NCBI GenBank assembly: GCA_965655095.1
Contig: OZ296649.1
Coordinates: forward strand, 37,696,001-37,760,000
DNA: 64,000 nucleotides
Source of the DNA: Haplodiscus bocki
Lineage: Eukaryota
Direction: 5' to 3'
The position numbers and the translations under genes are program-made. The notes beneath the pieces are model-generated. The model was not told the origin of the DNA and did not search any database. It saw only the letters and a program-made list of their open reading frames with translations. The first letter of the stretch is position 1; each line of letters begins with the position of its first letter. This document shows, in pieces, positions 47,055 through 54,964 of this stretch.

Positions 47055-48148
47055 TCATTTGTCTCCCAAATATGACTCAGCAATCTCGAGATCTTCTTGA
47101 GACTGCAAGTACTCTTCGCTGCTTTTGCCATGCAGATTGCCAGCCAACGTCAATGTCCTTTTAAAGTAGTTGACTGCTTCAGGATAATTCTTTGTTCTGA
47201 AGTACGTTGCCGCTAGGTTGTTCAAGCACCAAAGTAGATCACTTTTCCCACTGATGCCATTTTTGGCATTATGCTCACAAATTTTGAGATCTTTCAATCG
47301 ATAAATTATGCTTTTTTCCGCATCACCCATTTCTCCATAAAGGGTTGACATGTTGCTATACAGTGTACTAGCAGTAGAGTCAAATTGCGGCATTTTTGAA
47401 ACAATCTCTTCAGCTTCTTGATATTGCGTCAAAGCTTCTTCATGTTTGCCGCTTCTTTTGAGAGCTAATCCTAGAGTAGTTTTAGCTGCACCTACATTCG
47501 GGTGATCGGGTCCCAGGTTGGTCCGATTTATTCCAATCGATTTCTCCAAATGAGCAATTGCTTTGCCATAATCTCCTTCGGTCAGATAAATAGTTCCTGA
47601 ATTCTCATAAATTTTTCCCAATCCGTGATGGTCATCGCCGAAACATTCAATCACCAGTTTGATTGCCTTATCACAGAGTTGACGAGCACCTGAAACGTCA
47701 CCAGCGTAATGCAGTTTATGCATCGACAAGTTATTGAACGTTGTGGCCAACGAATACTTTTCAGTTGTATCAGATTTCTCTTTGATGGCCAAATCTTTCT
47801 CGTAATATTCCAGAGCTTTTTCCTGCTGGCCCAACTTGGAGTAAATTGAGCCAATATTGTTGTAAATGGAAGCTATTTCAAGAGTATCTGGATCCGTTTT
47901 GGAACTCAAATCGATTGCTTCGTTGTAGAGTTGCAGCGATCTTTGGAGTTGCCCCATTTCTTGATACATGAATCCCTGATTGTTTTTCATACTGGCTAAG
48001 GCTGTGCTTTTGCTTGGCACTGAATCGTCAACTGTTTTGTAAATTTTCTCGGCTTTGGCAAAAACGGATTCAGCATCTGTGAGTTTTCCAACTTGTGAGT
48101 ACCAAGACCCCACTTGCACCAATAAGTTGGCCGTTGGCATCGTTTGAT
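47055..48148 (-). CDS. TIR/HET-like-TPR protein, coding exon 4 (about 8 TPRs at ~42-aa spacing)
   Basis: Acceptor ctgtttcag|48148 in phase 1 (G|AT = Asp). Repeats such as IASIYNNIGSIYSKLGQQEKALEYYEKDLAI and LGPDHPNVG. Stop at 47055-47057. Confidence 0.92.
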
Positions 48149-48347
48149 CTGAAACAGATCTCACATTGAAATTTTTCAGAACAAGATTAAAGTTTTCGAA
48201 GCAACCATTCCAAAGCAATGAAAGTTAAACTGTCAAAATCAGAACGTTGTATTCAAGTTGTTCCCTAAACTTGACTGAGTGAGGAAGATATCCATGTCAA
48301 AAATTTATGACGTAATTTGGAAAGAAAGTTACGGACGTTTGAATTAC

Positions 48348-48504
48348 CTTGAGAAGATTTGACAACTTTTTCAGCATTCTCGTACAGCCATGATCGCATT
48401 TGGTCCTTGACTAAGGAGTCTAATTGATGGAAAGACATTGTTGTTTGAATCTGTTGAAAAATCATTTTCTTGTCATCTTCCCTTGTCGCTTCTGCTTTCT
48501 TTGA
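48348..48504 (-). CDS. TIR/HET-like-TPR protein, coding exon 3 (helical linker)
   Basis: ttcttgtttag|TCA...CAAG|gtaatt; 157 nt, phase 0 to 1. SKKAEATREDDKKMIFQQI...VKDQMRSWL; phases fit both neighbouring exons. Confidence 0.88.
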
Positions 48505-48998
48505 CTAAACAAGAATAGACTGATAAATTTCTAACTCTGTCAAGTTCTGGTCAGCTTTTATGAATTGGAATGTTTCTTTTCGAAAAAGAATACCGAAGAG
48601 CATTAACATTTATCAGAACTGAGTGACTTGAAGCTAATCTTGTGTCATTTATCAGTTTGAAGCTTCGAGAAAAAAACAACTTTTAACTATCAATGATTCT
48701 ACCTAACGGACGAAACTATTCATTCCCTAAAAACATACACTTTATTTATTTAATTTTTAACTTTATTTATAAAGATGAATTCAACAGATTAGGTAGGATG
48801 AATCTACCAATCAAGAAGAGTATATTTGGTCGAATATAAAAAATGTCCCATTTCGACAAAACTTCGAAACGAAACTGAACTTCGGCCCAAAAATCAACAT
48901 ACAAAATTTGCAAATTCTGGCTTCAACTTAAAAAACTGGCAAGTGGCTAGTCCAAATTGCCCTCTCGGTTTCATTCCAGTAATCCAAAACTGATAAGA

Positions 48999-49428
48999 TG
49001 TTGAAGATGTCTAAATATTATCGATGAATTAAGTAAATCTGAACAAATTATCGTATTACAGAACTACCACATTTCGTAGTCAGAGAATCCACAATTCAGC
49101 CAACTAAGGTTCGCTCATCAACATGCAGGTGCTGAAGCTCCAACTTCAACTAAGTCGCAAAATCCAGGCTTTTTATTTAATGGAGAAAATGTCCTCGAAT
49201 TTGCAGCTATCGGAGCTAGCGACAACACAATCTTCTAGTGAAGTATTTTACCTCCGCGAGACTCAACTTGCCCCTAGCTCCCTAACTCGGTTGTTTGGCT
49301 TTCAGTATATATAAACTCCTCCTTAGGTATATTTGCTTATTGCACGTGTTTACATTTACCATTACGGCGTATCAAGCGCTTTTAAAAACTTACTTAAACA
49401 CCTGAATAAACATTCCTCGCTGTCAACG
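48999..49428 (+). mobile_element. Possible solo or 5' LTR within the long intron
   Basis: Begins TGTTGA and ends TCAACG followed by TGG; contains TATATAAA (~49307) and AATAAA (49405); no TSD. Confidence 0.3.
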
Positions 49429-50952
49429 TGGTTCCATTCCTGACTAAATTTCATATTCCTTAATATTTCGAGTCCTCCGAGGTTTTATCGAAAAAGAAGC
49501 GATTATTCTATGACCTTCGGTTACATGGTTTCACAAGCTTCTTACACCTTGGGAGTCGTTTCACTTCACATTTTGGCATCCTGTACGTAGAACTTTCCGT
49601 TGAACTGAATTGCATAAATTACCGCGTTGCCGAAGCTACTTTACATATTTTGAGGTATATTCTCCTGAGTAGGCAAACATCACTGTGCAATGACCCTGAG
49701 GTCCATTCTTGACCTTGAATATAACCCGTAATATCTATAGCTACCATTTGCCAACTTATATACTCCTTGGGTCAAAGGTTTCCGATTTACATGGTTTGCG
49801 CATGACTTGTTTTTTAAGGCGGATACCCCCGGGTGGGTTACTAATACAGTTCCATACTTAGTAAAAATCCACTACATTCGTTTTTACCACCTGTTTGAGA
49901 TATCACAAGCAAAAGTCAAAGGTGACTTCTCCGCCGCGCCCGCGTGCTCTGTCCCGCGCTTTCTAAACAAACAATATGCCGCGCGCGTTGAAGTGGTGAC
50001 AATTGAATTTTTCATGTGCTTTACTTAGGTTTGGTAGGTGAATATTTTAGACAAGTTCCATGCTCCTAGGTTCGACCGGTGAAGATTTACATAACATTCA
50101 GTGTTCGTTTACATAGGGTCAGTTCCTTTACTACACTTCCCTTAGAGGTTCAAAACTATACGGTTTTTGTGATGCAAGGTCTCCCAGAAGCAATTTTTAG
50201 ATTTTGGTCCAAAAAAACTCAGTAAATTTTGCCTTCGCTTGTTCAATTGAGCGCATCTTTTCCTAGCATTAATAAATTTGACGTCGTCCAATTTGCTCAC
50301 TAATTGTGCTGTACCGTTCATTTTCTTTCCGTCACTTCTTAACAACATCAAATTTCATGAATAAGTAACGGCGATTCACGGTATGGTCAGCCCTTTTAGC
50401 TGACCTGCTTCTACCTAAGCATAACGAAACGTGCTGAACACCGTTCTGCTAACAATCTGGGCTGCGCGCATAAATCAAATGGTTTTTACAGTACTGCCAA
50501 AATAAAAAAAAATTTAGGATATGTACGGTATAAGCTGCTGAGCATAAGCTTTAGTTCGAAATATTTAACTTGGCTACAACAAAGGTTCCTGTTTCTTGCT
50601 TTTCAAAGTTTTCGGAATAAGCATATAAGGGCTCCCGAGAAAATTTATTCATTAAAAGAAGGTAGTGTTCGTGTTCCACGCCTTCAGTCCTTGTTCCCAA
50701 ACTTGTTTTCAAAGTTTGGAGTCTAAACAATGTGAACATTTTGTCAAATTTACGATGAAAAAAGTAGAAGCCACAGTGATGATTGTGGTCAGATACGTGT
50801 CAATATATATTGATGAGGAAAATTAACTAATTACTGTAAAAAATGGAGCATAGTGTTGATTTCGTTTTTTAACATGATGTGTTTATACATTCGGAAGTAG
50901 TGGATTTTTAGCCAACGTTTAGGCTATCACAAAACAATCTGACTTTAGTATT

Positions 50953-52799
50953 TGTGATGAGTGTGTGTTTGTCGGTCAAAGTTTCTTTCGTGGACCGACA
51001 AGTCACCTCCTTCTACAGTAAAACTACCACAAGTCTCATCAATCTTATTTGAATCTGTGTTCGAGTCTATTCTACTCGAGGCGGTCATCTGCAGGCTTTC
51101 GATTTTTTTCTGAAAAATCTCTCTGGTCTGAGTCTGGTATAACGCTATCAACATCCCGTCCAGAAGACGCGTTGAATGACTTCACTGTTAGTTTCACCCT
51201 AGGAATCACCAAACATTCTTTTGCAGTTAAGGTTGCCTCCTGTTTTCTAGTTTGAACTGTTGTCATTACGCTATCCACTTTGCTACGCACTTTGATAACA
51301 ATGCTCGTCTCATGAGTATGCACATCCACTTGAGAGTCATTCACTCGAGCTGGGTTTTTAGTGTGATTTGAAGTAATATTTTTTCCACGGACCTAGTTCT
51401 ATCTTCAATTTGGGCTTCATGATTGTATTGTCCAATCATGAAGTCTGTATCGGACTCACTTAAGTGACTAAGAAGCCGTTTTTTGTTTTCTCTTCTTTCG
51501 AGTGGAAATTACAGTAAAATCAACATTCGAATTAACCAAAAGTATTGAAGGAGGTTATACAAACGAATAGGAAACAGTGATGATTGGAAAGTGAAAACAA
51601 TCAGTTTAAAGGGCTTTGGAAGCAACTTTTCGATAATCTCCCGGCATTCCAAATGAAATTACCTCCTTGGGTCAGCTTTCGGTCGCGTCTGCTTTCTTGG
51701 CCAGCGGTTCGTTTTTCAATCAGAGTACGTCTTTTCGTGATGTCAACACTGCACGTTTAACTAGAGTTACAACCATAATTAAAATCAAAAAAAAGAATTT
51801 GCCGGGATTTCATGACGTCATTAACTTTTTACTATAAACTGCAACAATGTAAAAAAAAACACTGTTGAGGTTCAAATATGGTTTTCCTCAAATACATCTT
51901 CTAAAAATGGAACACATGTACTAAGCTGAGCTAGCGTCCAAACATAGTGATATATCGATCTAGGCAGTTAAAGTTGCAATGGAGTGTCTTAGTTGGTAGT
52001 TTGAGGCTCAAATATCTCGCTATGTAATTTTTTTGTAAACGACATGCGTTTGACTATAGGACTAGGTCAAACACTGGTTGCAAAGTTATTTTGATCGTCA
52101 TTTCTAAAAAAGCGCCTGAGTTTTGACATATCACTGAATAAATGCTTTGTGAGCCTCAGTAAGGTTAATTCGAAATTTTAGTGCCGGACTCAGTTAGCCT
52201 GACTTTTGGGGTCTTTCATTTCGTACAAGGTTTCGTAAAACACATATATAATGCACAGCTTCAATTATCGATCAAAAAAAGTCACATGAACATGCTGAGA
52301 CCTCTTAGTTATGTCACCAGTTGGCAGTTTTCCGATCGTCGAATGCCTACTGGCCTACTTTACGCGCATTACATTGCATGTACGGGTGGTTCAAATATAA
52401 CATTGTTCTGACTAGATAAATGGACTTTTGAGATCGTTTACTACAAGTACGCGTGGTTATGACGTTTTTACCACCTTCACGTCCGGATATAGCATCCTTA
52501 ATAGCCGTATTCCTTGTTTGGTCATAAGCCGGTCGAAAGACAAATTGTCGACTCGCTTTACTCCACTGGTTTATTTTTGTTCGGTCAAATGGCAGTCAAC
52601 GAATCCTATTTTGACCAGACATCAAATGAAAGCGTCTAGCACTTCCCATAGTGGATGAAATGGCTTAATATGTTGAAGTAAGCCAATAAGATTAAAGCAG
52701 CACCAATATTTAATTGTTTTCGTTTCAACACAGTGTTTTGAGCACATTCACCTTCAAATTGTTAATTACGTTTGGTGTATGGATTTGCTATACTTTACA
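50953..52799 (-). mobile_element. Dispersed repeat B, copy 1 (~1.85 kb, TG...CA ends, long-LTR-like), intronic
   Basis: Reverse complement is collinear with 56048-57796 (tgtaaag start, ggtcgaaagac, catgacgtca, gaaaagacgt, actcgaaagaa, ctcatcaca end). Confidence 0.78.
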
Positions 52800-54096
52800 T
52801 GTGTTTTTTATTTTTACATATACATAAATCTAGACTTTTACTAGCGTAAAAATCTACTAGGTTGAGCTACATGTAAGAGTTCTAGTTGCTGTTTGCATCC
52901 TGGAATAGGGGTTATTATCCCCTGTTCGGCCCGCTGCAAGGGTTACAATACGTAATATGATACGTTTGTCCGCCGCATACGGCAGCTTGCTACAATAATC
53001 TTTTGTTTTTTTTTAAGATGACAGAGGTCATTCTGTATACGAGGTTTTTTGTAACCAACACTTTTACTAATCGGCATTACCCAATACACCTACAGAATCG
53101 CTACAGTTCCGTAGAACGTTCCAAATACCTTTGAAAATCGTATACAGAAACTGAACATTTTTCGCAGCAGAAAATATGAAAACTTTTGTGAGACCCTCTA
53201 TGCAATATTGAATTTTTTTCAAGACACCAATATCAAAAACTTTTTTGATACCCCTTTATGTCTAATACAACATTTTTTGAGAGAAAAATGAAACGAAATC
53301 TTTTAATACTCCCCTTTATTGGTTTTTTAAAGACCGACCTTCTTTGCAAAATTTCTTTGGCGATAACGATTGAATATAACAAGGTTTTCAAAAAACACTA
53401 AACTCCCCCACCCTTGAGTATTTTGATCATCCCGGTGACACTGACTCGGTTGTTTGCGGTTTGTTGGATAAGTGAAATCAGCTATGAATAACCGAAGATT
53501 TTTGACTGGAAAAAATTTCAAAATGTCAAGTTACTTTAGTAGCGCAGTAGCTATTCTAATGAAAGGTATGATTACTAAATTGGACGTGGTTTTTGTTTTC
53601 ATGGCCAGTTTCTTGTAAAAATTTCAAAAATACATATAAAAACCTTAGAAAGTTCCCATGTTTAACAAATGTTTAAAAACGCCAAAGTTTAGCTTAGGCA
53701 AAAATATCTACAAACTGTTGAATTGCTTCTTGTAGCACAGTTAATAAAGACCCCGACAAGGTAGATTTAACTCCATCTGACCATAAAAAATTAACCAAAA
53801 AAACCAAAAAGTTCTCGGCCAGAGATGAGAGACATAAGTCGGAGTGGAACGTTAAGAAAAACATCTATATTTCTTCAAAAAACTGCTAAATTTCTACAAC
53901 TCATTCCTCGAAAAAAAACGGCTCCTTCAATGACCACAGGATCTTTGAAAAAAGTAACAGCTTGTTGTACCAGCAGCAGCAAAATTGCTTTGAGCAGAGA
54001 AAAGACATTGATTTTGTTTCGGGTGCCAGTGCATGTTTTCGGGGTATCTTCTTAAAAATATTTTGCTTCTCAGAACCATTTCGCATTCACGTTAAC

Positions 54097-54353
54097 CTGA
54101 ATGTTACTGAAATCAGTAAGAATGGTCCGGAAGTCGTCTTTGATTGCGGCTAAGAAGGAGTCATACTCTTGTGAAGACATGCCGACAGAGAGGACGGCTT
54201 TTTCTTGAACTGTGCACAGAATCTCCCACAAACACCAAGCGCGGGTGAAGGGAATGGGATTGTTCCAAGGGGATAAAACCAACAGCGTGTGACCAATTTT
54301 GCCGATTGTGCTCTTGAAGATGTTACTCCACCACGACTGATCTTTGGAAGTAG
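54097..54353 (-). CDS. TIR/HET-like-TPR protein, coding exon 2 (LLVLSPW...TRAWCLWEI)
   Basis: ccaatttgcag|CT...CAG|gttaac; 257 nt, phase 1 to 0. Reads ATSKDQSWWSNIFKSTIGKIGHTLLVLSPWNNPIPFTRAWCLWEILCT. Confidence 0.9.
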
Positions 54354-54609
54354 CTGCAAATTGGAAAAAGTGCTACAAATTCTTTCACTTGAGCCTGAAT
54401 TATTTCGAATCACAAATTTTCGGGGTGAAATACTCTCTCAAGAATTGCCTCTGCTTATTGCTTTATCACAATTGGTTTCAAAATCAAGTTTGCATGTTTT
54501 TTACAGTTCATTATGATTCCTTTACTCCACAATTATTATGTTTACATTTAAAAAATGATATTTTCCTGATGAATCTTTAGAAATTGAGAAGTGGTTTTGA
54601 AAGGGTAAC

Positions 54610-54964
54610 CTGTGTTTTGATTGTTAATGAATAGATCTATCCAGAAGTAAAACTTTTTTGCTGGGTTTGTCTTCTGCTCCGTCTCAGCATGCTCCAGACA
54701 CGTCGTGATCAAATCCGATAGTTTATAGCGCCAAGCATGACTCACAAAAACATTGGCAGTTCCCACCAACCAGTTGCCCTTTGAATCTTTCTTGTTTTCA
54801 AACAAGGAATAATAAGCGCTTTTATCTTTCTTCGTTGCGGGCAAAACTATTGTTGTAAGTGCTTGTGTTGTGCTGATGCTTTTGTCTTTCACCGTTTGGG
54901 ACATGAACTGTTTCAGAAACTCGCAACTCACCCCTTTAGGGGCTGTTGACTTTTTAGGAGGCAT
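54610..54964 (-). CDS. TIR/HET-like-TPR protein, coding exon 1 (FVSHAW, FYFWIDLFINNQ)
   Basis: ATG at 54964; donor ACAG|gttacc; 355 nt, phase 1; joins exon 2 in frame. Confidence 0.9.

What the first reader, a model, noticed from the sequence alone, without database searches (positions are those of the whole stretch)
47055..54964. Intact spliced gene fusing a catalytic-type TIR/HET-like domain directly to a TPR array: candidate minimal immune receptor in an animal-like genome
Seen: four exons (54964-54610, 54353-54097, 48504-48348, 48148-47055) with GT-AG ends and matching phases give one 620-aa ORF, which the ORF track shows only as unrelated fragments. The N-terminal ~200 aa carry FVSHAW, FYFWIDLFINNQ, LLVLSPW and TRAWCLWEI; the C-terminus has about 8 TPRs; there is no NTPase/STAND domain between them. 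Established: this motif order matches the TIR fold (FxS, xFxD, VLSP, WCxxE) and the related fungal HET domain (LSY.W, LWIDAICINQ, R.W..QE). The WCxxE glutamate (here E162, codon 54223-54225) is the catalytic residue of NAD+-cleaving TIRs (SARM1, plant TIR-NLRs, bacterial Thoeris). TPRs act as ligand sensors in bacterial and fungal immune receptors. Canonical animal TIR proteins pair with LRR, Ig, DEATH or ARM/SAM domains, not TPRs. Inference: ligand binding to the TPRs clusters the TIR/HET-like domain and triggers NADase or second-messenger activity. I recall similar architectures in protists such as choanoflagellates and algae, often mislabelled kinesin light chain, so ancient retention or horizontal gain are both possible.
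Basis: partly seen in the sequence, partly recalled or inferred. Interest (0 to 1): 0.88.

Follow-up and report, generated by a model that had tools for sequence, protein, structure and literature searches.

The report
Divergent TIR-like domain fused to TPRs
This is a real, intact four-exon gene whose protein joins a very divergent TIR-like domain, from a large unnamed family found mostly in protists, directly to eight TPR repeats; it may be a signalling enzyme, but its immune role and NAD-cleaving activity are only inferred.

Summary
The four minus-strand exons have GT-AG introns and join into a 620-aa ORF. The ORF is colinear with an uninterrupted 624-aa homologue (P0003). The gene recurs, with the same three intron positions, in at least three other assemblies. 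Against the closest one (L003), synonymous sites are saturated and introns cannot be aligned, yet the protein is 83% identical, so the gene is under strong purifying selection.

The C-terminal half is eight 42-residue kinesin-light-chain-type TPRs. There is no NTPase domain.

The N-terminal ~255 aa match no Pfam model. They belong to a large family (4,789 50%-identity clusters at E<=0.001), almost all eukaryotic and usually fused to the same TPRs. Named members come from choanoflagellates, chytrids, oomycetes and a diatom.

HET membership is not supported. Immune function and NADase activity are untested, and the slow evolution of both halves argues against a fast-evolving sensor. I read this as a new variant of a known kind.

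The parts
54610..54964 (-). Exon 1: start codon at 54964-54962, aa 1-118 plus one base. Holds the N-terminal strand and helices, strand A (FVSHAW; S75, H76, W78) and strand B (FYFWIDLFINNQ; W108, D110, Q116).
   Evidence: The ATG agrees with the N-termini of P0003 and the L003 orthologue.
54354..54609 (-). Intron 1 (256 nt, GT..AG, phase 1).
   Evidence: The same position is interrupted in L003 and L006/L007.
54097..54353 (-). Exon 2: aa 119-204. Holds helix B, strand C (LLVLSPW) and helix C (TRAWCLWEI; R156, W158, C159, E162), then strand D and helices.
   Evidence: This exon is 95% identical to L003 at the protein level.
54223..54225 (-). Codon of E162, the family-invariant glutamate at the start of helix C (E156 in P0003).
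48505..54096 (-). Intron 2 (5,592 nt, GT..AG, phase 0). It is inflated by interspersed high-copy repeats; the orthologous intron in L003 is 1,102 nt.
48348..48504 (-). Exon 3: aa 205-256 plus one base. Holds the C-terminal helices of the N-terminal domain.
48149..48347 (-). Intron 3 (199 nt, GT..AG, phase 1).
   Evidence: the position is shared with L003 and L006/L007.
47055..48148 (-). Exon 4: aa 257-620 plus the stop codon. Eight 42-residue TPRs of the TPR_12/TPR_10 (kinesin-light-chain/NPHP3) type.

Best explanation
The locus is an expressed-type, selectively maintained gene for a 620-aa protein with no recognisable signal peptide, so probably cytosolic. Residues 1-255 form a very divergent member of the TIR / nucleoside-deoxyribosyltransferase fold class. 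This domain belongs to a large, mainly protist family that has no Pfam model. Residues 257-620 form eight KLC-type TPRs joined to that domain by a long helix, with no NTPase between them.

Shown: the gene structure, the architecture, the size and spread of the family, the purifying selection, the predicted fold class, and the set of invariant residues. In the sequence order of the model's secondary structure, those residues sit at the C-terminal ends of strands A, B and C and at the start of helix C: F-x-S-H-x-W, W-x-D-x5-Q, P-W-x-x-P-x-P, and R-x-W-C-x-x-E.

Inferred: the invariant residues form an active site on the face where TIRs bind NAD+. E162 would act as the catalytic glutamate of an N-glycosidic-bond-cleaving enzyme, acting on NAD(P)+ or another nucleotide, possibly to make a signal. 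The TPR array would bind a partner or ligand and control self-association and activity. Whether the trigger is microbial (immunity) or endogenous (regulation) is open. The slow evolution of both halves in this animal lineage leans towards a conserved partner.
For: Gene: splice sites, ORF; colinear with P0003; L003 orthologue with the same intron positions and phases, pS 0.76, pN 0.097, introns unalignable; L006/L007 orthologue shares all three intron positions.

Architecture.

Family: 4,789 clusters at E<=1e-3, 2,760 at <=1e-10; 10 of 10 full-length relatives carry TPR_12/TPR_10; 8 Salpingoeca rosetta paralogues, plus Chaetoceros, chytrids, Aphanomyces and a chrysophyte; Atlas clusters labelled oomycete, haptophyte, chlorophyte and ciliate, TM by the model 0.50-0.87.

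Sequence-level hint: TIR_2 is the only Pfam family that recurs below threshold, in 2 of 56 and 8 of 60 relatives, best E 0.0019. The hhalign comparisons are not significant, but they place strands B and C and helix C in the expected register, with W152/E156 on the W..E of a TIR_2 domain.

Invariant residues, all kept in the window protein.
Confidence: 0.55

Rival explanations
1. Non-catalytic adaptor. The TIR-like domain works only by homotypic or heterotypic assembly, as in MyD88 or MAL, and the TPRs dock cargo or partners. The invariant residues would then be structural or interface residues.
Against: An invariant polar set (H, D, Q, R, C, E) clustered at strand ends across very distant eukaryotes is more typical of an active site than of an interface. 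The best matches include catalytic TIRs (SARM1, RUN1, RPP1, AbTir, ThsB, SPARTA).
Confidence: 0.2
2. Housekeeping or regulatory enzyme, not an immune receptor. A conserved nucleotide- or nucleoside-processing enzyme is recruited by its TPRs to a fixed cellular partner.
Against: The family is hugely expanded and architecturally shuffled in protists: at least 8 paralogues in S. rosetta, two or three separately matched stretches in some proteins, and fusions to DUF285, methyltransferase and HNOB. That is the pattern of conflict or signalling systems. The paralogue number in this genome could not be measured.
Confidence: 0.3
3. A true member of the fungal HET (PF06985) cell-death domain family.
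For: HET has published remote similarity to TIR and reported homologues in stramenopiles, haptophytes, choanoflagellates and green algae (PMC4986451), which is the same taxa as this family. One relative hits HET at E 0.025.
Against: HET appears in only 1 of 115 relatives, against 10 for TIR_2. None of 116 profile hits carries PF06985. The ten full-length relatives scanned, five of them S. rosetta proteins, show no HET at E<=0.01.
Confidence: 0.1
4. The TIR resemblance is only a generic three-layer alpha/beta arrangement, and the domain is an unrelated enzyme, for example one using the invariant Cys, His and Asp.
Against: Of 48,161 representative chains, the top of the list is almost purely TIR/NDT rather than CheY, Rossmann or GTPase folds. 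Out of 24,736 Pfam models, TIR_2 is the only one that recurs.
Confidence: 0.1
5. Contaminant, or recent horizontal transfer from a protist.
For: Named relatives are all protists or fungi. The family is patchy, and one copy sits on a contig labelled as a Verrucomicrobiaceae MAG.
Against: The gene has host-like GC and spliceosomal introns. Genomic contigs of four runs cover it continuously at ordinary depth. Orthologues with shared intron positions exist in at least three other large-contig assemblies, with saturated synonymous divergence. In the tree the clade is a long-stemmed sister to the group that holds the choanoflagellate copies.
Confidence: 0.04

Closest known systems
Catalytic TIR domains (SARM1, plant TIR-NLRs such as RUN1 and RPP1, bacterial ThsB, AbTir, SPARTA TIR-APAZ)
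   Different: It fails the Pfam TIR, TIR_2 and ThsB_TIR models. It has an extra ~60-residue N-terminal strand-plus-helices element and a ~85-residue C-terminal helical extension. It has its own invariant set (H76, D110, Q116, R156, C159). No activity has been shown.
Fungal HET domain (PF06985)
   Same: Both have remote TIR similarity. Both have reported homologues in the same protist groups (PMC4986451). Both sit N-terminally in front of repeat arrays.
   Different: The HET HMM is not matched. In fungi HET usually sits on NACHT/NB-ARC NLRs or stands alone, whereas here it is fused straight to TPRs. HET's own mechanism is unknown (PMC10890737).
TIR-TPR proteins of invertebrate immune-gene surveys (an oyster survey that also compares sea urchin and human; an Aplysia survey) and bacterial TIR_2-TPR_12 proteins
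   Same: The two-part architecture is the same, with no NTPase. Examples are P0082, P0389 and P0391, which are TIR_2 plus TPR_12 proteins found. The TIR-TPR class is listed in PMC4346834 and PMC9334734. A bacterial Tir/Tpr pair defends against phage (bioRxiv 10.1101/2023.05.26.542521).
   Different: Those proteins carry canonical, Pfam-detectable TIR domains. This family would have been missed by such surveys.
Kinesin light chain / nephrocystin-3 TPR proteins
   Same: The 42-residue TPR_12/TPR_10 repeats are the same. Several relatives are auto-annotated 'Kinesin light chain 3'.
   Different: There is no KLC N-terminal heptad-repeat region; the N-terminus is the TIR-like domain. The KLC label on relatives reflects the TPRs only.
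NLR / STAND receptors, including plant TIR-NB-ARC-TPR proteins
   Same: An effector domain at the N-terminus and a repeat sensor at the C-terminus.
   Different: The defining NTPase switch is absent.

Membership tests
Pfam TIR / TIR_2 / ThsB_TIR | The sequence scores above the curated HMM threshold. | tested here: not met
   No hit for the exon pieces or for P0003:1-255, even at E<=10. Only sub-threshold TIR_2 hits were found, in 10 of 115 relatives, best E 0.0019.
TIR superfamily (fold level) | A flavodoxin-like alpha/beta fold that superposes on solved TIR domains better than on other folds. | tested here: met
TIR superfamily (fold level) | Significant profile-profile similarity to a TIR family. 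| tested here: inconclusive
   hhalign of A1 against one TIR_2 domain gave E 0.33, and against a 5-sequence TIR_2 alignment E 0.078. The registers are sensible but not significant. The TIR profile was shallow.
Catalytic (NADase-type) TIR | A conserved glutamate at the start of helix C that lies in the substrate cleft. | tested here: inconclusive
   E162 is invariant in 115 relatives and lies in helix 151-162 of the model, directly after strand C. Its 3D superposition on SARM1 E642 or RUN1 E100 could not be inspected.
Catalytic (NADase-type) TIR | NAD+ cleavage or production of cADPR isomers or other signal molecules. | not testable with these tools
   This needs biochemistry.
HET (PF06985) | The sequence scores above the curated HMM threshold. 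| tested here: not met
   One of 115 relatives hits at E 0.025 and none hits above threshold. No PF06985 label occurs among 116 profile hits.
NLR / STAND | A central P-loop NTPase (NACHT or NB-ARC). | tested here: not met
   There is no Walker A motif and no NTPase Pfam hit. The TPRs start within about 10 residues of the end of the N-terminal domain.
Kinesin light chain | An N-terminal heptad-repeat region that binds kinesin heavy chain, followed by six TPRs. | tested here: not met
   The N-terminal 255 aa fold as an alpha/beta domain. Only the TPR type is shared.
The unnamed 'SHxW / WxD..Q / RxWCxxE' domain family (A1, A3) | Full-length, highly significant match and retention of all invariant residues. 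| tested here: met
   P0003 finds 419 clusters at E<=1e-30. The window protein keeps all 8 positions invariant in A1 and all but one of the 18 nearly invariant ones, with S at the usual G222.

The most novel reading that the evidence does not exclude
The family is a previously unrecognised, eukaryote-wide branch of catalytic TIR-type enzymes. It would signal or kill through NAD+/nucleotide cleavage under direct TPR control, without any NTPase switch. The animal copy would be a vertical survivor from the common ancestor of choanoflagellates and animals. That would make it an ancient TIR effector class that domain-based immune-gene surveys have missed because no model detects it.
Probability: 0.3. 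Interest if true: 0.75.

Novelty: new variant of a known kind. Interest (0 to 1): 0.52.

Why it matters
TIR domains are the shared enzymatic core of immune signalling in bacteria, plants and animals, and surveys of them rely on Pfam models. Here a family of several thousand sequence clusters has a confidently predicted TIR-like fold and its own invariant polar residues. It is invisible to those models, is expanded in the closest unicellular relatives of animals, and is kept under strong constraint in at least one animal lineage. If it proves catalytic, it would add a new TIR branch and a simple two-part design (TIR-like domain plus TPRs, no NTPase) that can be tested directly with NAD+-cleavage and E162A assays. 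It would also bear on the unknown mechanism of the fungal HET domain. If it is not catalytic, it is still an unannotated domain worth a family model.

Tried and rejected
- Pfam on the exon pieces and on the N-terminal domain of P0003 gave nothing relevant. The only hit was a short, probably spurious Rad26-like_N match at E 4.5e-4.
- PDB sequence searches with the single sequence and with the profile found nothing.
- PADLOC defence models found nothing.
- The ESM Atlas feature search gave no usable hit.
- The Atlas shape search returned only the family itself, not HET or TIR clusters.
- hhalign against TIR_2 was not significant. The search meant to build a deep TIR profile returned only four proteins.
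- I could not obtain any HET sequences through the tools, so no profile-profile test against HET was run.
- The scan of viral contigs found no relative.
- The scan of 185,579 prokaryotic genomes used one motif pattern and found one contig, so distant prokaryotic relatives may have been missed.
- Sequencing runs: only four genomic runs hold the locus and none is RNA, so junction reads could not be checked.
- Rfam and tRNA scans of the window were empty.
- The organism was not identified. Another agent's note calls it an animal, probably a coral; I did not verify this.
- The paralogue count in this genome could not be measured; the look-up by sequence in earlier findings was blank, which means nothing.
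- Searches for papers naming five of the Salpingoeca proteins found none, and I found no paper describing this domain family.
Full report
**Observation**

I joined the four proposed minus-strand exons (54964-54610, 54353-54097, 48504-48348, 48148-47055). Each intron starts GT and ends AG. The phases fit and the joined CDS is 1,863 nt, giving 620 aa and a stop. The window holds no N.

**Support for the gene model**

- Searching the exon-4 product found P0003, a 624-aa protein encoded without interruption on two ~2-kb Logan contigs. The spliced window protein aligns with it from residue 7 to 617 at 55% identity, with no break at any exon junction. I could not tell whether those contigs are cDNA or genomic, and no poly(A) tail is visible.
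- A 256-kb ENA contig (L003) carries the same four exons at 77-95% protein identity, with GT-AG introns at the same positions and phases.
- Between the window and L003, synonymous sites are saturated (pS 0.76) and the three introns share no detectable similarity. The proteins are nevertheless 83% identical, with pN 0.097. pN/pS is 0.12 for the N-terminal domain, 0.105 for its core and 0.13 for the TPRs.
- A further orthologue lies on contigs of 634 kb and 105 kb (L006, L007). An exon-1-like ORF of the same 90% cluster sits on a 438-kb contig that I did not fetch. The L006/L007 gene is split into about eight pieces, and its breaks include all three of the window's intron positions (residues 118/119, 204/205, 256/257).
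- The gene is therefore old in this lineage, vertically inherited there, and under strong purifying selection.
- The four public runs that hold the locus are genomic. Their contigs cover intron 2 continuously and show no splicing. There is thus no RNA evidence from this organism.

**Architecture**

- Exon 4 is a TPR_12/TPR_10 array (E 1.4e-53 and 8.4e-39).
- Helix-A motifs recur every 41-43 residues. Five match a strict pattern, and three more are visible at about 267, 393 and 564, which makes eight repeats.
- There is no Walker A motif and no NTPase hit, and the TPRs begin within about 10 residues of the end of the N-terminal domain.

**The N-terminal domain: sequence searches**

- Neither the exon pieces nor P0003:1-255 match any Pfam model of relevance.
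- Neither matches any PDB sequence.
- An exhaustive phmmer search of 1.84 billion cluster representatives found 4,789 proteins at E<=0.001, 2,760 at <=1e-10 and 419 at <=1e-30. The matched domain sits at many positions in proteins of 200-2,100 aa, and some proteins match in two or three separate stretches.
- All ten full-length relatives I scanned carry TPR_12/TPR_10 arrays and nothing else recognisable.
- Named members are eight Salpingoeca rosetta paralogues, a Chaetoceros 'TPR-like protein', chytrid proteins auto-named 'Kinesin light chain 3', Aphanomyces proteins and a chrysophyte.
- The ESM Atlas shape search found the same domain (TM by the model 0.50-0.87) in clusters labelled oomycete, haptophyte, chlorophyte and ciliate. 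Fusion partners there are TPRs, DUF285, methyltransferases or HNOB.
- None of 116 profile hits carries any Pfam label on this domain.
- A motif-based scan of 185,579 prokaryotic genomes found one contig, labelled a Verrucomicrobiaceae MAG. It holds an intronless 836-aa ORF of the same architecture.
- A scan of viral contigs found nothing.

**Fold**

- With a 56-sequence alignment (A1), AlphaFold2 gives a confident model of P0003:1-255: pLDDT 96.1, pTM 0.92.
- Its core runs strand (69-72), helix, strand (100-102), helix, strand (134-138), helix (151-162), strand (166-170), then helices. An N-terminal strand and three helices come first, and a long helical tail follows.
- Foldseek against the PDB gives no match at E<=0.001 (best 0.022). 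Of the 50 best rows, 47 are TIR-class chains (RPP1, RPPT, RPV1, RUN1, SNC1, SPARTA, MAL, SARM1, ThsB, AbTir, SpbK) and a 48th, 4nux, may be a SEFIR domain by my recollection.

**Sequence-level support for a TIR relationship**

- I scanned 115 family members one by one against 24,736 Pfam models at E<=1.
- TIR_2 was the only family to recur: 2 of 56 in A1 and 8 of 60 in an independent set, A3, with best E 0.0019. No other family hit more than two members in either set (DUF1949 had three over both sets).
- HET appeared once, at E 0.025.
- hhalign of A1 against a bona fide TIR_2 domain (P0036) and against a five-sequence TIR_2 alignment was not significant (E 0.33 and 0.078).
- The segments it chose are the expected ones. 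YFWIDLF aligns with the strand-B 'VWFD' block, LLVLSP with strand C, and W152/E156 with the W..E at the start of helix C.
- PADLOC models gave nothing.

**Conserved residues**

- Across A1 and A3 the invariant or nearly invariant residues, in window numbering, are F73, S75, H76, W78, W108, D110, Q116, P147, W148, P151, P153, R156, W158, C159 and E162.
- In the sequence order of the model's secondary structure, they all lie at the C-terminal ends of strands A, B and C or at the start of helix C.
- From established knowledge of TIR enzymes, that is the face that binds NAD+ and carries the catalytic glutamate (SARM1 E642, RUN1 E100; my own knowledge).
- This favours an active site.

**Mechanism (inferred)**

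- The most likely reading is a TIR-type N-glycosidic-bond-cleaving domain, acting on NAD(P)+ or another nucleotide, with E162 as the catalytic residue.
- The TPR array would bind a protein or ligand and govern self-association.
- Bacterial proteins with canonical TIR_2 fused straight to TPR_12 turned up in my own searches (P0082, P0389, P0391).
- A bacterial Tir/Tpr pair is reported to protect against phage through NAD+ chemistry (bioRxiv 10.1101/2023.05.26.542521).
- What triggers the animal protein is open.
- The large expansion and domain shuffling in protists look like a conflict system.
- In this animal lineage, however, both halves are strongly constrained and I saw one copy per orthologous locus. 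That fits a fixed partner better than an arms race.

**Comparison with what is known**

- It is not a Pfam TIR or HET member, not an NLR and not a kinesin light chain (see the membership tests).
- Dyrka et al. (PMC4986451) reported HET homologues in stramenopiles, haptophytes, choanoflagellates and green algae, and a remote HET-TIR link. The present family has the same spread but does not score on the HET model, so I treat HET as a cousin at most.
- HET's own mechanism is still unknown (PMC10890737, PMC10197012).
- The statement that animal TIRs do not pair with TPRs is too strong. A 'TIR-TPR' class is listed in an oyster survey that also compares sea urchin and human (PMC4346834) and in an Aplysia survey (PMC9334734). 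Those are canonical TIRs.
- I found no paper describing this domain family or five of the Salpingoeca proteins that I searched by name.

**Origin**

- In a quick maximum-likelihood tree of 58 domains, the window, L003 and P0003 form a clade with SH-aLRT support of 100 on a long stem.
- That clade is sister (support 91) to a large group that holds the Salpingoeca paralogues and many unlabelled environmental sequences.
- Together with the shared introns, this fits retention from a holozoan ancestor. Most rows are unlabelled, so ancient horizontal gain is not excluded.
- The host was not identified here. Another agent's note calls it an animal, probably a coral.

**Verdict**

- This locus is one constrained member of a large, unannotated, TIR-like domain family fused to TPRs.
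- I rate it a new variant of a known kind, of moderate interest.
- A clear biochemical test is available: wild type against E162A.

Noticed in passing
window:48960-49160 and window:50760-51160 (inside intron 2): Summed contig depth rises from about 30 to between 900 and 6,000 in the genomic runs. These are interspersed high-copy repeats, and they help explain why intron 2 is 5.6 kb here against 1.1 kb in the L003 orthologue.
   Followed up: partly
L005:2605-5115 (JAIYDP010000031.1, labelled Verrucomicrobiaceae MAG): This is the only hit among 185,579 prokaryotic genomes. It is an intronless 836-aa ORF with the same TIR-like domain plus TPR_10/TPR_12 array. It could be transfer into a bacterium or a eukaryotic contig binned by mistake.
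   Followed up: partly
L006:10103-18680 and L007:10103-18617: A further orthologue in two other assemblies (GC 0.34) is split into about eight exons. It shares the window's three intron positions and has about four more. It is closer to P0003 than to the window gene.
   Followed up: partly
L003:13244-18815: A Ty3/gypsy-type retroelement (RVT_1, RNase H, integrase) lies about 2 kb downstream of the orthologous gene. No protein hit from this region of the window was seen in the few ORFs I scanned.
   Followed up: no
P0004, P0005, P0009: Proteins of about 560-610 aa from ENA metagenomic records, organism unknown. Their N-terminal ~150 aa are alike; for P0004 they give weak TIR_2 and DUF4062 hits. 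KLC-type TPRs follow. This looks like another TIR-like-plus-TPR design without an NTPase.
   Followed up: partly
window:24000-40000: About 16 kb shows a steady AT skew of +0.16 to +0.25 and GC of 0.37, with almost no long ORFs. I did not look at what it is.
   Followed up: no
window:17918-18397 (+): This ORF ends in an SRP40_C domain (E 7e-23), which fits the C-terminus of the giant Nopp140-like gene that another note on this window describes.
   Followed up: partly
window:46632 (-): The only poly(A)-signal-like hexamer (ATTAAA) within 650 nt downstream of the stop codon lies about 420 nt past it. The 3' UTR end is therefore unknown.
   Followed up: no
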